Below are positions 6,118-63,500 of a stretch of 64,000 nt of DNA, one piece after another. The DNA is from Mobula birostris. Lineage: Eukaryota. The first letter of the stretch is position 1. Every line of letters begins with the position of its first letter. Made by a program: the position numbers and the translations under genes. Below the pieces are notes generated by a model that worked only from the letters and a program-made list of their open reading frames with translations, was not told the origin of the DNA and did not search any database. Location: contig NC_092379.1 of assembly GCF_030028105.1 (NCBI RefSeq), positions 29,195,821-29,259,820 on the forward strand, read 5' to 3'.

Positions 6118-6239
6118 GTGCACAGTCGCTAAAGGGCGATTTTTGCTAGAACACTGGAGGTGGCGCATTCAAATATTCGCGAGGATCACGTAATTGACAT
6201 AAGAGGGCGAAACTCAATAGCAAAATACATCGGTCAGGA

Positions 6240-6370: not shown

Positions 6371-7244
6371 TCCTGCGGACAATGGGAGCTCGCATTAGAG
6401 GGCGCGCTCGCTCCACCAGGTCCTGCTCAATATCGAACACAGTTTCGTCCTCGGGACCTCGGCGACAACAAAACCGCCCTGTTTAGAGGCTGCAGGGCTA
6501 GAATCACAAAAGTTGGAACACACCCAAAACCCCTAATAGCAATTTCCTACGAGAACGGCAGACATACATGCGTGGATAAAGCTTTGTGAATGAGGAGCAA
6601 CTTCAGGGAATGCGAGCAAAAGAGGAAAGGGATAGGAAGAGTCATCTGGTGGGAGGAGGCCGGCGGTAAAATTGACAGAGAAAGAGTGACGGAGATGGGG
6701 AAACAGAGTGAGCGAGAGAGAGATTGAGAGAGAAGGAGAGTAAAGTGAACGGAATGAGACGTCTAAAGCAATGAGATGGCGAGGGAGACATTGATAGAAA
6801 GTGCAGTAAGTAGACCGAGAGAGTTGGGTGCAACGCTGGAGAGTAAGGTCAAAATTTTATCTCTTCGTAGAGAGGAAACATGCAATTGTTTTATAAAAGT
6901 TGTTTCTGAGCCTGGTTATGCGTGATTTCAGGGTTTATATCTCCGCCGATGTAAAAGAGGCAGAGGAGAAGTGGCCGGAATTTTAATCGTGCTGACTACT
7001 TTACAGAAACAGCGACAAGTATCGATAGAGTCTGCGGAGGGAGGCTGAGGTGCTGCGTTGCGTCCTGTGCGTTGGGCTCTACTCAATAACGCCTTTGTCT
7101 GCCCTCCTACCCGCCGAACACTGAACCTTAACGCCGACAGGGGAATTTCCGTGTAGTGGGATGTGATGGAGACAGCTCCACACATGCTAATCCATCTTCA
7201 TCCCTCTTCTCGACAGTTACCTTCACAAACCCCTTCAATAGAGT

Positions 7245-9440: not shown

Positions 9441-10334
9441 CACGGCCCGGGTTGTATCCATCTCTGTCCCAATGAACGGAGAATCAATTGAGGACGTTAG
9501 GAGTGAGCCACAGGCACCCCTGTTGAGTGATAAGGGCGGGGGGGGGGGCGGGCAAGGGCGTTTCTCAGGAGATCCCAACGCAGACTCTCGAGGTCACAAC
9601 TCAGCCCATCATGGAATACAACCTTCTCTCACGAGACTCTACCTGTAATTCTCGCTGCCTCTGTGCAGTAGTCAGCATAGTTACCCATTCCGGCCGTTCC
9701 CTATTCTGTCTCTTTTTCAATGGCGAATGATACAAAGCCTGAAATCGCGTATCACAAAGCTCACCGGAATCTGTTGAAACTAATATATGGATCCTAATTA
9801 CGATAAGATATAATTTTGATCTTTTTACCCTTGTTATGAGCTTGCTCCTTTTCCTCAGCCTGAGTCAGCTCTTCCCTGTCTATTGCCCACTCGTCTCTCT
9901 CGCTCTACTTACTGCTCTTTCCACCACTGTTTCTCTCGCCATCTCATTTCTCTCTGCTTCATTGCTCTCTACGCCTCCCCATTTTATTCACTTACTCCCT
10001 CTCTCGTTTTTACTGCCTTCTTTTCCCTACCCACAATATCTTTCATCCTATCTATTTCCCTGCTTTTGCTCGTTTCCCCTCTAGTCGCTACTCATTCGCA
10101 AAACCTTATCACGCATACGTATCTCTCGGTTCCACGTTAGAAACTGCAAATATGAGTTATTGGTGTGTTATCCCGCTACCCTGCAGCATTAGAACCGGTG
10201 TACATAGAAGGGGTATTGTCGCCTGGGTCACGAAATCGGGACGGTACACAATGTTGAGCTGGCGATAAGGGGGACTTGGAGGTGGCGAGGGACACCCCCA
10301 CACCCCATGCGAGCGCGCACTATTTTCAGGGTGA

Positions 10335-10450
10335 GTCTGTGTTCGGATCCAAAGTCGACTTGGCCTGGATCAGAGAGGGCTGTACGGTACAAAGATACAC
10401 AGCGCAATCGGGTACAAAAGCCCCGGAGATATTTAGATAACACCACTGGT
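10335..10450 (-). pseudogene. 3' remnant of a V with degenerate RSS
   Basis: YLNISGAFVPDCAVYLCTVQP, then a degenerate spacer and ACACAGACT-CACCCTG (cf. ACAAAAACT-CACCCTG after the intact Vs). Confidence 0.7.
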
Positions 10451-10612
10451 CATTTTTGTCCAAACAACATCACATAATGACAGATGTATTTTGCGACTGA
10501 GTTTCGCCCTCTTAAGTCAACAACAACACGTTCGCAGATATTTAGTCGTGCCCCCTTCGGTTCTCCAGCAAAGGGCGCCCTCTAGGGACCGCTCTGCTCG
10601 TCACCGCAGGGA

Positions 10613-11081
10613 AGATTTTATCCGGAGCCAACACCTCCTTACAACAGTTGTTCCCAATGGCACAGAGGTGCACAGCGAAGTCTGACAGACTAGCTCCAGA
10701 GATATTAAAATGAACCTTCTTGCTATCTCTCTGCGACGCAGCAGTAAACCTCACTGGAGATGCTGGGGACTGCTCCGTCGTTCCTGGGGAATATAACTTC
10801 AGCAAGTATTTTGGAGATGCCCGCGATGCTGAATGCAGCAAAAATTATATGTGCATCAATGTTTCTAATTACAGTTCAGTGTTATGGTCTGTCTTTCTTC
10901 AACCTTTAATTCAGGAGACTGCTAGGTCACAGAATCTTCCCCAGTCACTCCTGCAATAAAAGCACAGAATGCATGAGCACCTCGCGATGCACCGCTCACA
11001 CGGAACAAATGCAAGTCATTGCCGCGTAGACTCACCGGACATCACCCACAACATCATCATCAAAGAACAAAGGGAACACAT
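10613..11081 (-). pseudogene. TCR V pseudogene (family B): leader 11081-11036, V exon 10950-10651, degenerate RSS
   Basis: Leader MCSLCSLMMMLWVMS G/gtgagt; acceptor ttattgcag; V reads GVTGEDSVT*QSPELKVEERQTITLNCN*... with stops and a 1-bp frameshift, then PKYLLKLYSPG...VHFNISGASLSDFAVHLCAI; CAACTGT-22bp-ATAAAATCT. Confidence 0.9.
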
Positions 11082-11471: not shown

Positions 11472-11589
11472 ATCTCCCTGTCTCTCCCGCACTTCTTCGC
11501 AGCTTCTCCACTCAATACCCATGTCTCCAACTCAAAGTCTCCCTCCCTTTTCAGTTTGGAGAAGTACACAGACTCAGTAGCCCATCATC

Positions 11590-13180
11590 GCGCAAGGCGG
11601 CTGAGAAGGATCCAGGATAAAAGGGACACAGTGCCTAGCGGAATCGGTCGTCGAAAGAGTGACCGTCGGAGCAGTGTGAGTCAGAGTAGCGGTGCTTTGG
11701 CTGATCGGAGCCTCGGCGAGGGCGGCCTAGGGGAGGAAAGGAGTTAAGATGCGTCCGTACCTCGTTTTCCCTCTAACTTAAGAATAGTGGTTATGACTGC
11801 AAGGCCAGATTTCTGCTCTGGTTGTCACATTTGGGATATCCGGAGACTTCCATCTGCGCCAGCTGCATCAAGCTGCAGCCGTTAGTGACCGAGTTAAGGA
11901 AATCGAACTGCAGCTCGATGACTTCGGCTTGTTAAGGAAAGTGAGGAGGTGATCGATAGGAGATACAAGCAGTTGTCATACCGTGGCCATAGGAGACAGA
12001 TAAGTGGGTGACTGTCAGGAGAAGGAAGGGAGAGCGTCAGGTAATGGCGAGCATCCCTGCGGCTGTACCCCTTAACAATAAGTTCTCCATTTTGAGTGCT
12101 GTTGGTGGGGGCGACCTATCTGTGGGAAGCAACAATGGTCGTGCCTCTAGAACTGAGTCTAGCCTTATGACTCAGAACGGCAGGGAATGGAAGAGGATGG
12201 CATCAGTGATAGGGGACACTAGTTAGGGGAACAGAAAGGCTACTCTGTGGAAACGAAAAAGAAACGCGGATGGTAGTTTGGATCCCAGGTGCCAGGGTTC
12301 ATGCTGAACGTGTCCACAATATCCTGAAAGGTGAGGGTGAGCAGCCAGAAGTCGTGATACATATTGGTACCAACGATATAGGTAGAAAAATGGAGATGGT
12401 CCTGAAAAAATAAATATTACAGGGAGTCAGGAAGGAAGCTACAAAGCAGGGACACAAGGGTAGTAATCTCGGGATCGCTGTCTGTGCCACGCGACATGGA
12501 GTATAGAAATACAGTGAACTGGCGGATTAATGCGTGATTGAAGGATTGGACTGGGGTTAGTGATTCAGATTTCTGGATTATTAGGAACACTTTAGACGCG
12601 GTTGTGGACGGTACAAAAAGGATGGGTTGTACTTGAATCTGAGGGGGATCAATAACCTGGCGGGGAGGTTTACTACTGCTACTGGGGAAGGTAGTTTGTG
12701 AAGAAGGCTAGGCAGATGATAGAGCAAAGATGAACTCATCCTGATGGTTTGAGATGTGTCTATTTTAATGCAACGCGTATTATAAACCAGGCGGATCAAT
12801 ACTTGGATCTGTCACGTTGTGGCCATTACAGAGACTGTGTCAGAAACAGGAATGGCTGCTGATTGTGCCAGGTTTTAGATGCTTCAAAAAGGAGAAGGAC
12901 GGAGGCAAAATAGCTGGGGAATGCCATTGCTGATCGGGGATAGTGTCACCGCTGCAGGAAAGGATTTAAGTCATGGAGGGATTATCAGTGTGGGTGGAGT
13001 TGGAACAAGAAAGGGGGCAATAACTCAACTGGGTGTTTATAGCCACCGCCCCTTTCCCCTTCCCAATAGTAACAGAGACATCGAGGGGTAGATACGGAAA
13101 CATATGTTCTCAGGCAAGGCAAAAATGTGCCAAATATTCAGGGAACAACTTTGCAGGCCGTAGGGGCTGTAATGTGCTGT
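11590..13180 (+). mobile_element. CR1 5' portion (5'UTR, decayed ORF1 Zn-finger/esterase, start of ORF2), 3'-truncated
   Basis: MTARPDFCSGC..CASC zinc finger; VIHIGTND and KKDGLYLN esterase motifs; CVYFNA endonuclease start; paralogue at 17960-19900. Confidence 0.85.
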
Positions 13181-13730
13181 AGATTTCTTTGTTTCATGTC
13201 CTATGCTCTGTGTCCTTTTCTACCTGCACGAGATTGCTATCTCTTCGCTTCTTGCTCGACTAAACTCATCGCTATCCTACCCTTTCTTATTTTGTCCTCT
13301 TTGTCGCTTTTTTCTTCTTTCTTCCATTTCCCCCACTTTCCTTCCCTCTGTCTCGTTCCTTCCCTTCCTCTTATTCTTTTTTTCCATTTTTCTTTCCTTC
13401 CTATTCCGTTGTTCACTACTTTGCTTCTTCTCATTCCTCTCCATCGCTATTTCCTTCCGTTTCTCTTCTTCTTTCTTTCCACATTCTCCATTCCCCTTTC
13501 ACTTACTTCCTCTGTACCCCATTCTCAATTTCACTTGCTCACGCTCTCCTCCCCGTTTCTGCAATTCTGTCTCTCTCTCTCGGTCATCCCACTTATTACT
13601 CTCTCGATCACTAATTCTTTAGTTCTGTCACTTCTTCATTGCTCTATGCGTCTCCATCTTTCATTTACTTACTCTTCATTTCTCACTGTTTGTCTCTCTC
13701 CCTCAGACGGCACTCCTGCCTTCCACATCA
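13180..13730. repeat. CT-rich low-complexity tract downstream of the V RSS
   Basis: Direct reading; paralogue at 19940-20500. Confidence 0.9.
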
Positions 13731-14033
13731 CACTCCCTATATAACAAAACGCTATCTACACATAATATGCATCTCTGGCCTTCCTTCCCTCCGCGTCCGA
13801 AAACAACGGACACGCCACTGAGGACAGAAAGAAAGAGGAAAGCCGTTGCTCGTTAGTGGCTGTGGTTCTCAGGGGCTGTTGTTGAGGGTGTTGAATCACT
13901 TGGCACTCGCCCTGCAGACTTCAGTAGCCTCAGTTCAAGGAGGGTGCATTTTTGTCTCGGTCCCAAGGACGGGCCTTATTAAGTGCGTAGGGCTCAGTGC
14001 GCCCTCTACGGCGAGCGCCCACTACACAGGGTG

Positions 14034-14072
14034 AGTTTTTGTCACGATCCGCCGTTAGCCTGGAACGCTGTG
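14034..14072 (-). other. 23-bp-spacer recombination signal sequence
   Basis: Heptamer CACAGCG (14072-14066), 23-nt spacer, nonamer ACAAAAACT (14042-14034). Confidence 0.95.
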
Positions 14073-14504
14073 GGATCCACGGCGCAAATATACAGGGCGG
14101 AATCCGGCATGACAGTCTCGGAGATACTTATATGAAACCGCTGGCCAGTTTTGTTGAGAGAACCTGAAACCCTCAAAGAAATGCCTTCACCCCGAACCGG
14201 GTTTCCAGTGCTGAATATTGTCAACAATTGTTTCAGAGATTTTCCAGAATATAGAGCGTACCACAGATAAGCTCTGACCGTTCCCGAGTAGCTGCAGCTC
14301 AGCGACGCTGTCTGACTTTCCTCGATCATTAATTCCCTCCGATCCTGAGTCACCGAGATTGCCGCACTCGTACCTGTAACAAATCCCAGAGTGTGTGAGC
14401 GGCGCCGGATCGCACTGAACATGAAAAACACGCGCCAACCGATTAACCAGAGACTCACTAGGGAGAGCAGCCGTTAGAATCAGCAACCAATACATGGGAG
14501 ACAT
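14073..14504 (-). CDS. TRAV: T-cell receptor alpha/delta-type V gene, apparently intact (leader 14504-14459, intron 14458-14374, V exon 14373-14073)
   Basis: Spliced ORF MSPMYWLLILTAALPSTSAAISVTQD...SLSCSYSGTVRAYLWY...DSALYICAVD has Cys23, Trp41, Cys104, a GT-AG phase-1 intron and a 23-RSS. The alpha/delta assignment is inferred from the CAV end and overall similarity. Confidence 0.9.
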
Positions 14505-19900: not shown

Positions 19901-20793
19901 CGGGCGAATAGCCTGTAACGTGCTGTAACTTTCTTTGTTCTATGTCCTATGCTCTATTTTCTTTTCTACTTGCACGAGATTGCTGTATTTTCGCTTCTTA
20001 CTCGACTAATCTCATCGCTATCCTACCCTTTCTTATTGTGTCCTCTTTGTCCCTTTTTCCTTCCTTCTTCCTTTTCCCTCACTTTCCTTCCCTCTGTCTC
20101 GTTCCTTACCTTCCTCTTATTCTTCATTTCCATTTTTCTTTCCTTCCTATTCCGTTGCTCACTACTTTACCTCTTCTCATTCCTCTCCACCGCTATTTCA
20201 TTCTGTTTCTTTTCTTCTTTCTTTCAACATTCTCCATTCTCCTTTCACTTACTTCCTCTGTACCCCATTCTCATTTTCACTTGCTCACGCTCCCCTCCCG
20301 TCTCCACATTTCTCTCTCCCTCCCTCTCTCTCTCCCTCTCTCTCTCTCTGTCTCTCGCTCATCCCTCTTATTACTGTCTCGATAACTTTAGTGCTCTCAC
20401 TTCTTCATTGCTCTCTCTGTCTCCATCTTTCACTTACTCTTCATTTGTCATTGTTTGTCTCTCTCCCTTTCCCTCAGACATCACCCCTGCCTTCCACATC
20501 ACTCTCCCTATATATCAGAACGCAATCTACACATAATATACATCTCTCGCCTTCCTTCCCTCCGCGTCCGAAAATAAGGGACAGGCCACTAAGGACAGAA
20601 AGAAGGAGGAACGTCGTTGCTCGTTAGTGGCTGTGGTTCTCAGGGGCTGTCGGTGAGGGTGATGAATCGCTTGGCACTCGCCATGCAGACTTCAGTAGCC
20701 TCAGTCCAAGGAGAGTACAGTTTTGCCTGGGTCGAATGGACGGGCCTTGATAAGTGTTGTGGATGGAGCTCAGAGCGCCCACGACACAGGGTG

Positions 20794-20832
20794 AGTTTTT
20801 GTCCTGATCCGCCGTCACCCTGGAACACTGTG
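20794..20832 (-). other. Consensus 23-bp-spacer RSS
   Basis: CACAGTG (20832-20826), 23-nt spacer, ACAAAAACT (20802-20794). Confidence 0.97.
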
Positions 20833-21264
20833 GGCTGCACGGCGCAAAGGCACAGGGCGGAATCCGGCATAACAGTCTCGGAGATAGTTATGTGAAACCG
20901 CTGGCTAGTTTTGTTCAGAGAACCCGAAATCCCGACCGGGCTGTCTTCAGACTGAACCGCATCGCCCGTGCTGAATATCGTCAACAATTTTTTCAGTGAC
21001 TTTCCAGAATGTTGAGCGTACCACAGATAGGCTGTGCCGGTTTCCGAGTAGCTGCAGCTCAGTGACACTCTCTGTCCTTCCTTCGTTATTAATTCCTTCG
21101 GATCCTGAATCACCGAATTTGCACAACTCGTACCTGTAACAAATGCCGAAGTATGAGAGAGGCGCCGGGTCGTAGTGGCCACGTCGAACACGCGCTAACT
21201 GGCCAGGCAGAGACTCACCATGCAGAGCAGTAATTAGTATCAGCAACCAACACAGGGGAGACAT
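20833..21264 (-). CDS. TRAV: T-cell receptor alpha/delta-type V gene, open frame (leader 21264-21219, V exon 21133-20833); conserved Tyr102 replaced by Cys
   Basis: Spliced ORF MSPLCWLLILITALHGTSCANSVIQDP...SLSCSYSETGTAYLWYAQHSG...DSALCLCAVQ; canonical splice sites; consensus RSS. Confidence 0.88.
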
Positions 21265-21324: not shown

Positions 21325-21432
21325 AGCTTCACGTTAGGACGAGCAACACACTCTGTGGGCGACAGGTGGCGCATCTCTCGCACCTGATCTATCACTTACG
21401 CAAAATGGGGGGGATTCTAGATCCAATCAGAA
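21325..21432 (-). promoter_or_regulatory. V promoter module
   Basis: TAACGTGA 21329-21336, TTGCGTAA 21396-21403, CTGATTGG 21423-21430. Confidence 0.6.
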
Positions 21433-29607: not shown

Positions 29608-32600
29608 ATAGAACATAGAATAGTACAGCATAGTACAGGCCCTTCGGCCCACAATGTTGTACCGACCCTCAAACCCTGGCTCCTATATAAGCCCCCATCT
29701 TAATTTCCTCCATATACCTGTCTAGTAGTCTCTTAAACTTCACTAGTATATCTGCCTCCACCACTGACTCAGGCAGTGCATTCCACGCACCAACCACTCT
29801 CTGAGTAAAAGATCTTCCTCTAATATCCCCCTTGAACTTCCCACCCCTTACCTTAAAGCCATGTCCTCTTGTATTGAGCAGTGGTGCCCTGGGGAAGAGG
29901 CGCTGGCTATCCACTCTATCTATTCCTCTCATTATCTTGTACATCTCCATCATGTCTCCTCTCATCCTCCTTCTCTCCAAAGAGTAAAGCCCGAGCTCCC
30001 TTAATCTGTGATCATTATGCATACTTTCTACACCAGGCAGCATCCTGGTAAATCTCCTCGGTACCCTTTCCAATGCTTCCACATCCTTCCTATAGTGAGG
30101 TGACCAGAACTGGACACAGTACTCCAAGTGTGGCTTAACCAGAGTTTTATAGAGCTGCATCATTACATCGCGACTCTTAAACTCTATCTCTCGACTTATG
30201 AAAGCTAACATCCCATAAGCTTTCTTATCTACCCTATACACCTGTGAGGCAACTTTCAGGGATCTGTGGACATGTACCCCGAGATCCCTCTGCTCCCCCA
30301 CACTACCAAGTATCCTGCCATTTACTTTGTACTCTGCCTTGGAGTTTGTCCTTCCAAAGTGTACCACCTCACACCTCTCCGGGTTGAACTCCATCTGCCA
30401 CTTCTCAGCCCACTTCTGCATCCTATCAATGTCTCTCTGCAATCCTTGACAATCCTCTACACTATCTACAACACCACCAACCTTTGTGTCGTCTGCAAAT
30501 TTGCCAACCCACCCTTCTACCTCCACATCCAGGTCGTTAATAAAAATCAGGAAAAGTAGAGGTCCCAGAACAGATTCTTGTGGGACACCACTAGTCACAA
30601 TCCTCCAATCTGAATGTACTCCCTCCACCACCACCCTCTGCCTTCTGCAGGCAAGCCAATTCTGAATCCACCTGGCCAAACTTCCCTGGATCCCATGCCT
30701 TCTAACTTTCTGAATAAACCTACCGTGTGGAAACTTGTCAAATGCCTTACTAAAATCCATATGGATCACATCCACTGCACTACCTTCATCTATATGCCTG
30801 GTCACCTCCTCAAAGAACTCTGTCAGGCTTGTTAGACACGGACTGCCCTTCACAAAGCCATGCTGACTGTCCCTGATCAGACCATGATTCTCTAAATGTC
30901 TATAGATCCTATCTCTAAGAATCTTTTCCAACAGCTTTCCCACCACTGGTCTATAATTACCCGGACTATCCCTACTACCTTTTTTGAACAAGGCAACAAT
31001 ATTCGCCTCCCTCCAATCCTCCGGTATCATTCCCGTGGACAACGAGGACATAAAGATCCTAGCCAGAGGCTCAGCAATCTCTTCTCTCGCCTCGTGCAGC
31101 AGCCTGGGGAATATTCCGTCAGGCCCCGGGGACTTATCTGTCCTAATGTATTTTAACAACTCCAAAACCTCCTCTCCCTTAATATCAACATGCTCCAGAA
31201 TATCAACCTTACTCATATTGTCCTCACCATCACCAAGTTCCCTCTCATTGGTGAATACCTAAGAGAAGTATTCATCGAGGACCTCGCTCACTTCCACAGC
31301 CTCCAGGCACATCTTCCCATCTTTATCTCTAACCGGTCCTACCTTCACTCCTGTCATCCTTTTTTTCTTCACATAATTGAAGAATGCCTTGGGGTTTTCA
31401 TTTACTCTACTCGCCAAGGCCTTCTCATGCCCCCTTCTTGCTCTTCTCAGCCCCTTCTTAAGCTCCTTTCTTGCTTCCCTATATTCCTCAATAGACCCAT
31501 CTGATCCTTGCTTCCTAAACCTCATGTATGCTGCCTACTTCCACCTGACTAGATTTTCCACCTCACTTGTCACCCATGGTTCCTTCACCCTACCATTCTT
31601 TATCTTCCTCACCGGGACAAATTTATCCCTAACATCCTGCAAGAGATCTCTATACATCGACCACATGTCCATAGTACATTTCCCTGCAAAAACATCATCC
31701 CAATTCACACCCGCAAGTTCTAGCCTTATAGCCTCATAATTTGCCTTTCCCCAATTAAAAATTTTCCTGTCCTCTTTGATTCTATCCTTTTCCTTGATAA
31801 TTATAAAGGCCAGGGAGCGGTGGTCACTGTCCCCCAGAAGCTCACCCACTGAGAGATCTGTGACCTGACCCGGTTCATTACCTAGTACTAGATCTAGTAT
31901 GGCATTCCCCCTGGTCGGCCTGTCCACATACTGTGACAGGAATCCATCCTGGACACTCTTAGCAAATTCTGCCCCATCTAAACCCTTGGAACTAATCAGG
32001 TGCCAATCAATATTAGGGAAGTTAAAGTCACCCATGATAACAACCCTGTTATTTTTGCACCTTTCCAAAATCTGCCTCCCAATCTGCTCCTCTGTATCTC
32101 TGCTGCTACCAGGGGGCCTATAGAATACCCCCAGTAGAGTAACTGCTCCTTTCCTGTTCCTGACTTCCACCCATATTGACTCAAAAGAGGATCCTGCCCT
32201 TTCTGTAGCTGTAATAGTATCCCTGACCAGTAATGCCACCCCTCCTCCCCTTTTTCCGCCCTCTCTATCCCTTTTAAAGCACTGAAATCCAGGAATATTG
32301 AGAATCCATTCCTGCCCTGGTGCCAGCCAAGTCTCTGTAATGGCCACTACATCATAATTCCATGTATGTATCCAAGCTCTCAGTTCATCACCTTTGTTCC
32401 TGATGCTTCTTGCATTGAGGTACACACATTTCAGCCCTTCTACCTTACCGTCTTTACACCGTTTATTCTGCTTCTCTTTCCTCAAAGCCTCTCTGTATGA
32501 TAGATCTGGCTTTACTCCATGCACTTCTTTCACTGCTCTATCGCTCTGGGTCCCATCCCCCTCGCAAATTAGTTTAAATCCTCCCGAGCCATGCTAGCAA

Positions 32601-35399: not shown

Positions 35400-35860
35400 A
35401 ACAGTACAGCACAGGAACAGGCTCTTCAGTGCACAATGCCTGTATCTACCACTTTACTAGTTCAGACTGACATGTCCCTGAACATGGTCCATTTGCCTGC
35501 ATCTTATGAGCCAATCTAAGTGACCCTTAAACGTTATTCAGTATTTGTTCCAACACTTCCCTGATAGAGTGTTTCAGGTATCCGCAACGCTCTGTGCAAA
35601 TGAAACACTGTCTTAGAAAATTTCTTTTAAACTTTGCCCCTCTGACCATAAATCTATGCCCTCTACAGGTTGCCATTTCCACCCTGAGGAGAACAATTGG
35701 ACTCTCCCATATCTCTACCTGTGATACTTGTATGATCCTTTCTCAGGTCTCCCCTGAGCCTCCAACGCTCCAAAGAGAACACATCAGGTTTGTCCAAACT
35801 CTCCCTATCGCTCATACCTTAAAAGCCAGGCAAGATTCCTGCTAACCTGCTTTCCACCTC
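35400..35860 (-). mobile_element. CR1 3' fragment
   Basis: Reverse complement resembles the CR1 ORF2 C-terminus and 3' UTR. Confidence 0.65.
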
Positions 35861-41626: not shown

Positions 41627-41815
41627 GGGGCGGGGCTGGCGGAGTGTCGCGGTAATGTATAAAACCAGCGCCTCCTAATGGCCCACTGTGCTGCGATTTC
41701 CTCAGTCCTCTCTTTCCTTGGAAACTGCTTTGGGTTCCCTTCTCTTTCGGCTGTCCACCGATTTCCGGTTCAAATCCCCGCCTCTATTCCTACGTATTCC
41801 TCTGGCAGAGTAAGT
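41627..41815 (+). promoter_or_regulatory. Candidate Pol II promoter (GC box + TATA) and non-coding first exon ending at a GTAAGT donor
   Basis: GGGGCGGGGC 41627-41636, TATAAAA 41658-41664, CpG-rich context, CAGA/GTAAGT at 41809/41810. Confidence 0.55.
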
Positions 41816-53700: not shown

Positions 53701-55069
53701 TGAACGAGTCCTTCACTTCCTTGAGACCTGGTGGTATCTAGCGACCTTTTATCCAATATTTTCATTTAATTTGATTTATTACTCTTTCAATCTTTTTTTT
53801 TCAAAGTTTTAGATTTGCTCAGAAAGTCTTTCTTTCTTTTTTTTTTGGTCGTATCCTCAAAATGGACTGCTCTGTCCCTTTTTGGGTTTTTTTTATATAG
53901 TGTAGTGGGTTTTTTTTCCTCTCCATTTAAAGCTCAATCTTTTTTCTTTTCTCTTTATAAACTGATAAGAGGAGAACTGCTATTTTCATTTTTTTATTGT
54001 ATATTTTATACTAGTTTAACAATATCTATGATTTTGTCAATGTTTATCTTAATCTCGGTTTATATTGTTACTGATATATATATTTGAGATCATTCTCCTC
54101 TTGATTGTATTTATGCTACTTTTAAATCAATAAAAGATTAATAAAGAAAGAGACCTGGCAGCTACTTCCCTTCAGCCTCAGGGCAAGTCTCCCAGACTGC
54201 TCGGATATTTCCTTGGTCTTCTCCCGACCAGGAAGCTCTCTGTCTGGTTCCTGTAGGATTCTGACTAGACTGTCGGGATTTGCACTGTCCCATTGGCCAG
54301 AACCAGCTTGTCTGTGCTTGAGGACTGGACTAGGTCTCCAGGTCCTATTCCCTTGCACTGAAGTTGTCCCCTTATAGGTCATTGATCAATAGAGAGTCTG
54401 GGTGTCGGAACACCATGACGTACACAAAGCCTCTTACTATGGGCCAAGCAATGACTCTCCCCTCTCTCCATTCCACAGGTGGGTTACGCTGGGACAGCTA
54501 ATGGTACTGGAGAATTAGGGGTAGGAGTGGAGAGTCAATGTAGAAACTAATATCTTCCACATGATCCCCTATCCTCATCTGTAAGTCCACAGTATGTGTC
54601 TGGGTCTGCCCGGAACTAGCAGTCAGCTGCCCAAGACGGTTTTGTGGGCAAGGATTTGCTCAACTCTCACAGTGACGTTTTGAACAGACGGGTGGTTTCT
54701 AAAGCCAGAAAATTACCTGCTGCTCCCGATTCCACAAAAGCCTTCTCATGCCTCGAGTTCTTACCCCAGGTGAACTCCGCCTTCAGCACCAAACCGGAAT
54801 CCGTGGGATTGGGCATAGCTGCTGCTAACGTCACAGTCCTCCGACACTAGACGATCTTAGTAGTTCCCCAGTTGGCTTCAGTTTCAGACATTCGGCCCGC
54901 AAGTAACCTGCTTCCCCGCAGTGAAGGCAGCAGCCTTGACTCCGACACCAGGACCTCTCATGGGTGGGGAGTCTACTGCAACCAACTTGCATGGGTTCAA
55001 CTGGACGGTGATGGGCTGGTCATGGCCGGAGGGTGGGGAGTAGAACTGCACTGCGTAGGGACTGAGCTG

Positions 55070-62019: not shown

Positions 62020-63190
62020 CATAATTTTCAAACTCCTCTATCAGTTCACCCCTTTTTCTTATACATTCCAAGTATTTAAAGATCAGGGCTAGAAAAGCCC
62101 GCCCTATGAATCAGGCCCTTTCGTCATGGAAACACCCTTGCAAACTTTTTCCAGCTTAAGCATGTCTTTCTATAAAAGAGTGGCCAATGCTGTACACAAT
62201 ACTCCAAGTGTGGCCTCACCACCATATTGTACAAATACAACAAAACGACTCAACTCTATCACTCATTGTCCTGACTGATGAAGGCAAGAATGCTAAGCAG
62301 CTTTCTCATCACACTGTGTAGCTGTGGCACTGTTTTCAGCAAACCCATCCTGTCATGCAAATCAGCTTTGAACACTGTAAACCCACAACGCTCCCCTGAG
62401 GGCCAGGAACAGGAGCTGTCTCAGCAGGTTTCCAGAATTCAGACTAATGATTCCGAAAAAGAACACTTCAACGGCATAAGGTTACAAAAGACTGAATTTA
62501 TTAAGAAATAGGAAAATGCAGGAGATATTAATCAAACAATTAGTAAAATAGTAAGTCAGAATTATCACTAAAGCAATCCTGCCCTTCTTCAGGGATTCCG
62601 CAGAGATAATCGAGAGCATCAAGGAGAATATAGATCAGTACAGCACAGGCAAAGGCCCTTCAGCCCACAGTATTGTGCTGAACAAACTAAACTGGAAAAG
62701 AAACATGACACAAATCTCATTCCTACTGCCTCCACAATGTCCATAATTGTAGGCAGAAGTGACTAGTTTAGCAGGTGAATGTGCAGAAGTTTCCCTGCAC
62801 ACCCGCGTGCCTATCTACAAGTCTCTGAAACACGCCTATCACATCTGCCTCCACCACCAGCCCTGGCAGTGCATTACAGGCACCCACCACTCTGTTTATA
62901 TTTAAAAAATTGTCCTGCACATCTCCCTTTAATCTGCCCCCTTAATTGCCTGCCCTTAGATGATAGATTATTTTGTCCTTGGGGAACAGTTACTGGCTGT
63001 CTACTCTATCCTTGCCTTATAAACTTCCCTCAACTCCCGCTCTCCAAATAAGTTGACCCAACTTTGTCCAACCTCTCCCTACAGCTCCTGCCCTCTCCTG
63101 GCATCCTGGTTTAACCTCCTATGCCCTCTCCAAAGCATCCACACTCTTTTGTAAGTGGGCAAGCAGAGCGTACGGCAATATCCCAGAGGC
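62020..63190 (-). mobile_element. Decayed CR1 3' fragments
   Basis: Reverse-complement similarity to the CR1 C-terminus/3' UTR. Confidence 0.65.
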
Positions 63191-63204
63191 AGCCTAACCA
63201 GAGG

Positions 63205-63500
63205 GGGGTGCCACAGTGGCCTAGCAGTTAGAGCAATGCTTAACAATGCTAGCGATCAGGGTTCAACTTCTGCCATTGTCTGTAAGGAGTTTGTACATTC
63301 TGCCTGGACTATGTGGGTTTTCATCATGGGAACCAGTTTCCTCCTGGATGCCAAAGACCTACGTGATTGAAGTGGTAATTTGTGGGCATGCTATGTTGGC
63401 ACCAAAACCATGGCGACTCCATGGGCTTCGCTCAGCACAGCCTCAGACTGCGTTGGTAATTGATGCAAATGAGACATTGCATTTTATGTCTCCATATTTA
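63205..63500 (+). mobile_element. tRNA-derived SINE (HE1/V-SINE-like)
   Basis: cacagtggcctagcagttag..gggttcaacttc A/B-box head followed by a gtaaggagtttgtac..gtgggttt..gtttcctcc core. Confidence 0.7.

What the first reader, a model, noticed from the sequence alone, without database searches (positions are those of the whole stretch)
13997..14015. CTCF-like motif ~20 bp 3' of V-gene RSSs, in one orientation relative to the V
On the V sense strand, ctcgCCGTAGAGGGCGC lies 18 bp past the nonamer of the intact V (13999-14015). Related copies: gtCCCTAGAGGGCGC ~20 bp past the family-B RSS (10575-10593), cgCATTAGAGGGCGC after the remnant RSS (6391-6405), and a degenerate CGCTAAAGGGCGA after the inverted B RSS (6126-6140). 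These fit the 3' core of the CTCF consensus (CCASYAGRKGGCRS) with 5' mismatches. RSS-adjacent CTCF elements that stall cohesin/RAG scanning are established for mouse proximal IgH V genes. Finding this layout in two V families of a cartilaginous-fish TCR locus would suggest the mechanism is ancestral to jawed vertebrates. The second intact V (20794) has lost the motif, giving a natural test of V usage. Another CTCF-like site, GGGCGACAGGTGGCGCA, lies in that V's promoter (21356-21373).
Basis: partly seen in the sequence, partly recalled or inferred. Interest (0 to 1): 0.72.

Follow-up and report, generated by a model that had tools for sequence, protein, structure and literature searches.

The report
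CTCF-type sites behind TCR V signals
Behind most V gene segments of this cartilaginous fish's T-cell-receptor alpha/delta locus, about 21 bases past the recombination signal and facing the same way as the V, sits a conserved motif for the DNA-looping protein CTCF; this layout is known from mouse antibody heavy-chain genes, the copy flagged here is a weak one at the far end of the array, and binding is untested.

Summary

- **Focal site (13997-14015):** alone it is sub-threshold, at 6.7 bits and p about 1.7e-4.
- **Locus-wide pattern:** it is a degenerate copy of a wider element. In 28 V segments picked by protein similarity alone, 24 carry a V-sense CTCF-type hit starting 17-25 bases (mostly 20-22) after the nonamer. 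Chance would give about 0.001 per V.
- **Conservation:** the core is as conserved as the RSS heptamer and nonamer. It is two to four times less diverse than the distal flank within three V families.
- **Other families and species:** it recurs behind V families with dissimilar flanks. It is also present in the little skate (3 of 3 V) and the Antarctic toothfish (10 of 10). It is rare or absent in Danionella, a skink and a frog.
- **Orientation:** the J-alpha array lies 5.5 Mb away on the same strand, so the motifs of this cluster point towards it. The window is the distal end of the array.

Most likely these are RSS-associated CTCF-binding elements like those of mouse proximal VH genes. Binding, any effect on V usage, and ancestry in all jawed vertebrates remain untested. 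Other agents of this scan reported the same layout elsewhere in this genome.

The parts
13997..14015 (-). Focal CTCF-like 19-mer behind V1 (CTCGCCGTAGAGGGCGCAC), starting 18 nt after the nonamer
   Evidence: 6.7 bits, p=1.7e-4, 12 of 14 matches to the IUPAC core. The mismatches fall at matrix positions 4 and 6.
14034..14072 (-). V1 23-RSS (heptamer CACAGCG 14066-14072, nonamer ACAAAAACT 14034-14042)
14073..14373 (-). V1 V exon, open frame ending ...DSALYICAVD; TCR alpha-type V
   Evidence: best PDB matches are TCR alpha V domains, E 1e-10 to 1e-12
14016..14033 (-). Spacer between nonamer and motif. It holds GTAGTGGGCGC, a direct repeat of the motif's GTAGAGGGCGC with a period of 16 nt.
   Evidence: V2 keeps only this first copy.
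10573..10591 (-). Strongest site in the window (CGGTCCCTAGAGGGCGCCC), behind the family-B pseudogene V (in-frame stops; heptamer mutated to CAACTGT at 10644-10650; nonamer-like ATAAAATCT at 10613-10621)
   Evidence: 14.1 bits, p=5e-6, starting 21 nt after the nonamer
10562..10580 (+). Overlapping opposite-strand CTCF-like hit that shares the palindromic GGGCGCCC
   Evidence: 13.7 bits
6389..6407 (+). Copy behind an inverted family-A V remnant (CTCGCATTAGAGGGCGCGC)
   Evidence: 6.7 bits
6123..6141 (+). Degenerate copy behind the inverted family-B remnant
   Evidence: 2.7 bits
20794..20832 (-). V2 23-RSS (CACAGTG / ACAAAAACT). The motif is missing from its flank: a 16-bp deletion with the junction at 20772/20773.
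21356..21374 (+). CTCF-like hit in the V2 promoter, antisense to the V. No equivalent hit of at least 7 bits occurs upstream of the other 35 V genes.
   Evidence: 9.6 bits

Best explanation
The focal 19-mer is the local, weakened copy of a locus-wide element. This is a CTCF-type motif in V-sense orientation whose 19-mer matrix match starts 17-25 nt (mostly 20-22) after the 23-RSS nonamer of most TCR alpha-type V segments in a TCR alpha/delta locus of at least 5.6 Mb.

Most likely these are RSS-associated CTCF-binding elements. In the minus-strand V cluster (C12 28.43-29.22 Mb) they point towards the J-alpha array (C12 23.60-23.69 Mb, same strand). Bound CTCF would therefore stall cohesin loop extrusion coming from a J-based recombination centre and hold the adjacent V RSS there for RAG, as shown for mouse proximal VH genes.

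Shown here: the motif, its position, its orientation, purifying conservation, and its presence in other species. Inferred: CTCF occupancy, cohesin stalling and an effect on V usage.

The window's own copies look like decay at the far distal end of the array. V1 has a weak motif and a CACAGCG heptamer. V2 has lost the motif by deletion and has Cys in place of the conserved Tyr before the second Cys. The best site in the window sits behind a dead V.
For: - Position and orientation: 24 of 28 unbiased V carry a V-sense hit at offsets 17-25, against a background of about 1.5e-4 per position per strand. The IUPAC check gives 17 of 28 with at most 2 mismatches.
- Specificity: 27 of 28 genome-wide RSS-plus-motif hits lie in this cluster, with 0 in the control pattern.
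- Conservation: the weighted information content of the core equals that of the heptamer and nonamer. Nucleotide diversity of the core is 0.06-0.07, against 0.17-0.28 (up to 0.45 in the farthest F3 flank) beyond +130, in families F1, F2 and F3. Only 8%, 1.5% and 4% of non-coding windows are as conserved.
- Identity: the column profile correlates with MA0139.1 at r=0.62, against a null maximum of 0.49. Differences between families fall mostly at degenerate CTCF positions.
- Other families: V families with dissimilar flanks still have a site at +20 to +23 (L068/L075 13.4 bits; L069 and L071-L073 11.2 bits).
- Other species: little skate 3 of 3 V at 16.5-17.2 bits; Dissostichus mawsoni 10 of 10.
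- Direction: the J-alpha array is on the same strand, downstream of the cluster.
- Plausibility in this clade: in the little skate, ctcf and cohesin genes are present, and MA0139.1 motifs in ATAC peaks are orientation-biased at TAD boundaries (PMC10115646).
- Known mechanism: RSS-associated CBEs at mouse proximal VH genes; deleting the VH5-2 CBE cuts its rearrangement 50-fold (PMC10293834).
Against: - There are no binding, accessibility or repertoire data; no ChIP or ATAC run could be identified.
- Most sites are only moderate, 6-15 of a possible 27 bits. T replaces the strongly preferred C at matrix position 4 in about 90% of the weighted sequences. The largest families (F1, F3) have G instead of A at position 9.
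- The focal site is below the usual threshold.
- An intact V (V2) lacks the motif, and the best site in the window is behind a dead V.
- In the inverted, plus-strand V genes (25-28.4 Mb) the motif follows the V and so points away from J. This fits inheritance with the V unit better than selection for direction.
The IUPAC check agrees with it.
Confidence: 0.55

Rival explanations
1. The element is a conserved site for a different DNA-binding protein, or one part of a composite V-downstream regulatory module, and only resembles the CTCF core. The module would comprise TGATGCA at +8 to +16, the GC-rich core, a second GGGGCGCAC block, and the E-box CACGTG at +83 to +87.
For: About 110 bp of flank is conserved in blocks, not the core alone. 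CACGTG occurs at +83 to +87 in 25 of 36 V. There are systematic departures from the CTCF matrix at positions 4 and 9. In family F1 the whole +1 to +130 stretch is conserved.
Against: The core is the only block shared by families with dissimilar flanks, by the skate and by the toothfish, where it is a near-canonical CCACCAGAGGGAGC. Family A has the core without the E-box. No better-fitting known motif came to mind, but that rests on memory and was not tested.
Confidence: 0.2
2. The motif has no function. It is flank sequence copied along with each V during array expansion and kept similar by recent duplication or gene conversion.
For: Most flanks in the minus-strand cluster align with each other. 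The motif's orientation follows the V even in inverted V genes. V2 is intact without the motif, and dead V genes keep it.
Against: The core is as conserved as the heptamer and nonamer and far less diverse than neighbouring flank in three families. It persists at the same offset where the rest of the flank is dissimilar, and also in the little skate. F1 carries extra V-sense sites at +49 and +113 while its +21 site is weakened, which looks like turnover under constraint.
Confidence: 0.12
3. The block is an extension of the recombination signal itself, contacted by RAG/HMGB1 or needed for the post-cleavage complex.
For: It lies at a fixed distance from the nonamer and is as conserved as the RSS.
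Against: The offset differs between lineages (+21 here, +21 and +28 in skate, +30 in toothfish). It is absent from other functional 23-RSS V genes of the same genome (L074, L077-L084) and from frog and skink V genes. From general knowledge, no RAG contact beyond the nonamer is established.
Confidence: 0.04

Closest known systems
RSS-associated CTCF-binding elements of mouse D-proximal VH genes (VH5-2/81X and dozens of others)
   Same: A CTCF motif within tens of bases downstream of the V 23-RSS, co-oriented with the V and pointing to the (D)J recombination centre, repeated behind many V genes (PMC10293834; PMC5859386 Table 2).
   Different: The locus is TCR alpha/delta rather than Igh, in a cartilaginous fish. 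The layout is seen across the array, including its most J-distal end (5.5 Mb from J), not mainly in proximal V genes. The motifs are weaker on average. Some families carry two or three tandem sites plus an E-box. Binding and function are untested.
Mouse Tcra/Tcrd V-region CTCF sites
   Same: The same locus type. Most sites (129 of 144) point towards J-C (PMC5859386).
   Different: [quoted passage not shown] Here they lie behind the RSS, and no general promoter site exists within 1.4 kb.
V8E, a conserved downstream element of PAIR-associated mouse VH8 genes
   Same: A conserved putative regulatory element in the downstream sequence of a V family (PMC10390877, abstract only).
   Different: Only the abstract was read, so its sequence and binding factors were not compared.
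CTCF-type motifs behind TCR-beta and TCR-alpha/delta V RSSs reported by other agents of this scan in the same genome
   Same: Same layout and orientation rule (notes s1-145129, s1-145130, s1-145196, s1-145254, s1-145321).
   Different: Those notes give offsets of 32-43 nt for TCR beta. The three TCR-beta-like V genes I sampled on C17 showed no motif within 110 nt.

Membership tests
RSS-associated CTCF-binding element (CBE) | Sequence match to the CTCF core motif at a conventional threshold (p<1e-4, or PWM score of at least 8 as used for skate in PMC10115646) | tested here: inconclusive
   The focal site fails (6.7 bits, p=1.7e-4). The family-B site passes (14.1 bits). Across the array, 17 of 28 V reach 8 bits and 24 of 28 reach 6 bits.
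RSS-associated CTCF-binding element (CBE) | Located within about 100 bp downstream of the V RSS | tested here: met
   The match starts 17-25 nt (mostly 20-22) after the nonamer in this genome.
RSS-associated CTCF-binding element (CBE) | Motif oriented towards the (D)J-C recombination centre | tested here: met
   The J-alpha array lies at C12 23.60-23.69 Mb on the minus strand. The minus-strand V cluster at 28.43-29.22 Mb has V-sense motifs pointing to it. This is not met for the inverted plus-strand V genes at 25-28.4 Mb.
RSS-associated CTCF-binding element (CBE) | Conserved beyond neutral expectation | tested here: met
   Information content equals that of the heptamer and nonamer. Diversity is 0.06-0.07, against 0.17 or more in the distal flank. 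The motif is present in the little skate.
RSS-associated CTCF-binding element (CBE) | Occupied by CTCF (and cohesin) in lymphocyte precursors | not testable with these tools
   No ChIP, CUT&RUN or ATAC run could be identified among the runs found.
RSS-associated CTCF-binding element (CBE) | Raises recombination-centre contact and use of its V | not testable with these tools
   This needs repertoire data, 3C data and mutants.

The most novel reading that the evidence does not exclude
RSS-adjacent, V-sense CTCF sites are an ancestral feature of jawed-vertebrate TCR alpha/delta V arrays. They would be retained in batoids and some teleosts, and lost or moved to promoters in tetrapods. Cohesin/CTCF-guided presentation of V RSSs to RAG would then date to the origin of V(D)J recombination in large translocon-type loci.
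Probability: 0.25. Interest if true: 0.8.

Novelty: new member of a known kind. Interest (0 to 1): 0.6.

Why it matters
RSS-associated CTCF sites are a key part of the current model of how RAG finds V genes by loop extrusion. They have been established experimentally only in mouse Igh.

It also offers natural experiments. Paralogous V genes here carry strong, weak, multiplied or deleted sites, and there are inverted V clusters in which the site points the 'wrong' way. These could test the model through repertoire sequencing alone.

I found no paper describing this in fishes. That search covers open-access text only.

Tried and rejected
- **The search for homologous proteins:** run on V1 and on an F2-family V, it returned nothing. 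This is a limit of the word index, not evidence of absence.
- **Pfam PF09291 (TCR alpha constant domain):** it found no credible TRAC exon. The J-alpha pattern search located the J array instead.
- **Sequencing runs:** they carried no library labels, so no ChIP or ATAC data could be chosen.
- **Read laying:** it confirmed the assembly at V1. At 80% likeness it could not separate orthologues in related species from paralogues, so I draw no cross-species conclusion from it.
- **CTCF 'upstream motif' idea:** I considered that the conserved TGCAGTGAG block 5' of the core is that motif. By my memory of that motif, the spacing is about 5 bp too short. Left open and untested.
- **CpG protection:** CpG observed/expected is 0.74 in the flank against 0.65 overall, so there is no clear signal.
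- **Promoter CBE as in mouse Tcra:** no positional enrichment within 1.4 kb upstream. Only V2 has a hit, and it is antisense.
- **Other look-ups:** two representative proteins had no contig on record. The locus from assembly GCA_009733165.1 gave no V that passed my RSS filter.

Full report
**Observation**

The window is G000:C12:29195821-29259820 of a 4.0-Gb genome. On the minus strand it carries an intact V, here called V1. Its V exon is 14073-14373 and its open frame ends ...DSALYICAVD. Its 23-RSS is at 14034-14072, with heptamer CACAGCG and nonamer ACAAAAACT.

The flagged CTCGCCGTAGAGGGCGCAC (13997-14015, minus strand) begins 18 nt after the nonamer.
- 10573-10591 (minus) lies behind a family-B pseudogene whose heptamer has mutated to CAACTGT.
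- 6389-6407 (plus) lies behind an inverted family-A remnant.
- 6123-6141 (plus) lies behind an inverted family-B remnant.

The second intact V, V2 (RSS 20794-20832), lacks the motif through a clean 16-bp deletion. V1 reads GGGCGCtc[gccgtagagggcgcac]tgagc where V2 reads GGGCGCtctgagc. This is a slip between two GGGCGC repeats that are 16 nt apart.

V1's site scores 6.7 bits (p=1.7e-4), the family-B site 14.1 bits (p=5e-6), the remnants 6.7 and 2.7 bits, and the V2 promoter site 9.6 bits. The V2 promoter site is antisense to the V. So the focal site alone is sub-threshold.

**The wider pattern**

A protein search with V1 found 150 V-like matches, most of them on C12 between about 25.0 and 29.22 Mb. 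From 28.43 to 29.22 Mb nearly all of them are on the minus strand, and V2 is the last V of that run. V1's best solved-structure matches are TCR alpha V domains.

The 30 best loci were chosen by protein similarity only, so they are unbiased with respect to the motif. Of these, 28 have a 23-RSS:
- 24 of the 28 have a V-sense matrix hit of at least 6 bits starting 17-25 nt after the nonamer, and 17 of 28 reach 8 bits.
- The background rate in the held sequence outside these flanks (about 170 kb) is about 1.5e-4 per position per strand at 6 bits or more.
- Independently of the matrix, 17 of 28 have at most 2 mismatches to CCASYAGRKGGCRS in that window, against 0.0008 expected per V. 26 of 28 have at most 3 mismatches.

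A combined pattern of heptamer, 23-nt spacer, nonamer, a 20-32 nt gap and RGAGGGMGC has 28 matches in the whole genome. 27 of them are in this cluster, and the reversed control pattern has none. Within 1.4 kb either side of 36 V genes, hits of at least 7 bits pile up only just past the RSS. A second pile lies about 113 nt past the nonamer in family F1. There is no general promoter site.

**Conservation**

I aligned the 36 RSS flanks with MAFFT and weighted the sequences. The AGAGGG core is as invariant as the CAC of the heptamer and the A-run of the nonamer. The 14-column window over the core has 1.47 bits per column, against 1.42-1.52 for the RSS elements.

Within three V families the core has nucleotide diversity of 0.06-0.07. 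This compares with 0.17-0.28 from +131 onwards (0.45 in the farthest F3 flank) and 0.10-0.13 in the V exon. Only 8%, 1.5% and 4% of non-coding 19-column windows are as conserved in F1, F2 and F3 respectively.

The column profile matches MA0139.1 with r=0.62, against a null maximum of 0.49 at other offsets or on the other strand. There are two systematic departures:
- T instead of C at matrix position 4, in about 90% of the weighted sequences.
- G instead of A at position 9 in families F1 and F3.

F1, whose +21 site is weakened in this way, carries two more V-sense sites: +49 at 10.5 bits and +113 at up to 14.2 bits.

The flank is conserved in blocks over about 110 nt. These include an E-box CACGTG at +83 to +87 in 25 of 36 V genes. 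Family A, the window's family, has the core but not the E-box.

**Other V families and loci of this genome**

TCR alpha-type V genes on the plus strand between 25.7 and 28.43 Mb have flanks that look very different. They still carry a V-sense site at +20 to +23:
- L068 and L075: TGGTCACTAGATGTCGCGC, 13.4 bits.
- L069 and L071-L073: CAGACTTCAGGGGGCAGCA, 11.2 bits.
- L070, L076 and L078: weak versions.

The differences between families fall largely at degenerate positions of the CTCF motif. No site was seen behind the following:
- two other V families on C12 (L077/L079 and L080/L081);
- a solitary V at 47.4 Mb (L074);
- three TCR-beta-like V genes on C17 (L082-L084);
- germline-joined Ig-like genes on C9 and C3.

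**Orientation relative to J**

A J-segment pattern (12-RSS followed by a TTYGGNNNNGGNAC coding motif) found 18 J segments at C12 23.60-23.69 Mb, all on the minus strand. Their coding ends encode FG.G, the J-segment motif.

The minus-strand V cluster therefore rearranges by deletion, and its V-sense motifs point towards J. The window lies 5.5 Mb away, at the J-distal end of the locus. The plus-strand V genes in between are inverted relative to J, so their motifs point away from it.

**Other species**

Representative proteins from a profile-free HMMER search led to genomic loci through exact look-up.

| Species / assembly | V genes with a V-sense site near the RSS | Details |
|---|---|---|
| Little skate, GCA_028641065.1 | 3 of 3 | 16.5 bits at +21; 17.2 bits at +28. 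One flank shares the whole TGCAGTGAGCGCTCACTAGAGGGCGCC block with this genome's F2-type flanks. |
| GCA_025770515.1 (species not identified; flanks near-identical to the toothfish's) | 7 of 7 | Same motif at +30; one copy is broken by a 1-nt deletion (5.3 bits) |
| *Danionella*, GCA_007224835.1 | 1 of 6 | |
| Skink *Lerista edwardsae*, GCA_029204185.1 | 0 of 6 | |
| Anuran assembly, GCA_933207985.1 | 0 of 11 | |
| GCA_003427335.1 (cited in a brown-banded bamboo shark study) | 0 of 1 | A CAL-type V |

The distribution is patchy. Neither ancient origin with losses nor repeated gain is excluded.

**What is known**

[quoted passage not shown] In TCR alpha/delta they lie mostly upstream of V promoters, and 129 of 144 point to J-C (PMC5859386).
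- Dozens of D-proximal VH genes have RSS-associated CBEs that impede extrusion past the recombination centre. Deleting the VH5-2 CBE lowers its rearrangement 50-fold (PMC10293834, citing Jain et al. 2018).
- In the little skate, ctcf and cohesin genes are present, and MA0139.1 motifs (score of at least 8) in ATAC peaks are orientation-biased at TAD boundaries (PMC10115646). Using this matrix in cartilaginous fish is therefore reasonable.
- Full-text searches found no paper on CTCF sites at fish V RSSs.
- Other agents of this scan noted the same layout elsewhere in this genome, for both TCR beta and TCR alpha/delta, and call the organism a ray. I did not determine the species.
- One of those notes held the layout to be limited to skates and their relatives. 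The toothfish result argues against that.

**Verdict**

The element is real, conserved and best described as a CTCF-type site. It most likely works as an RSS-associated CBE (confidence 0.55).

The focal copy and its neighbours in this window are the weak, deleted or orphaned copies at the distal edge of the array. Binding, function and deep ancestry remain to be tested.

Noticed in passing
L012-L034 and relatives (C12 28.5-29.1 Mb); not in the window's family A: An E-box CACGTG sits at +83 to +87 after the nonamer in 25 of 36 V genes. It is part of a flank of about 110 nt conserved in blocks: TGATGCA at +8 to +16, the CTCF-like core, a second GGGGCGCAC block, GTCACGTG, and TTAAGAG.
   Followed up: partly
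Family F1 V genes, e.g. L014 (C12 28691480): There are three tandem V-sense CTCF-like sites behind one RSS: +21 (8.8 bits, with G at matrix position 9), +49 (10.5 bits) and +113 (up to 14.2 bits).
   Followed up: partly
G000:C12:23600197-23689654, minus strand: A J-alpha array of at least 18 J segments with 12-RSSs lies 5.5 Mb from the window. It defines the locus orientation.
   Followed up: partly
G000:C12 about 25.0-28.43 Mb: Many TCR alpha-type V genes lie on the plus strand, inverted relative to J and to the distal cluster. Either this is a large cluster that rearranges by inversion, or it is an assembly inversion. Their RSS-adjacent motifs point away from J.
   Followed up: no
window 20833-20860 (V2, minus strand): V2 ends ...DSALCLCAVQ, with Cys replacing the conserved Tyr two residues before the second Cys. 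Together with the motif deletion, this hints at relaxed constraint on the last V of the array.
   Followed up: no
window 30636-30654(-), 35654-35672(-), 41666-41684(-), 63086-63104(-), 63195-63213(+): Five more matrix hits of at least 12 bits lie beyond the last V. Counting the two at the family-B site, the window has seven, against about 2 expected. Four of the five are in the V-sense direction and could be boundary sites of the array.
   Followed up: no
window about 11500-13220: A very high-copy repeat lies between the family-B pseudogene and V1. Summed contig word depth reaches 1e5 in all four runs laid, including runs from related species.
   Followed up: no
window 10300-10420 (minus strand): A further decayed family-A RSS remnant. 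Its flank motif has eroded to tcgcatggggtgt.
   Followed up: partly
L096 (GCA_029706075.1, species not identified): Six tandem TCR-beta-like V genes (…YFCASSKA) each have a weak V-sense AAACCAACAGAGGTTGGTT (6.7 bits) at +20.
   Followed up: no
window 54637-54674: An RSS-like match here has no V in front of it, and the surrounding sequence does not look like an antigen-receptor segment. I treated it as a chance match.
   Followed up: no
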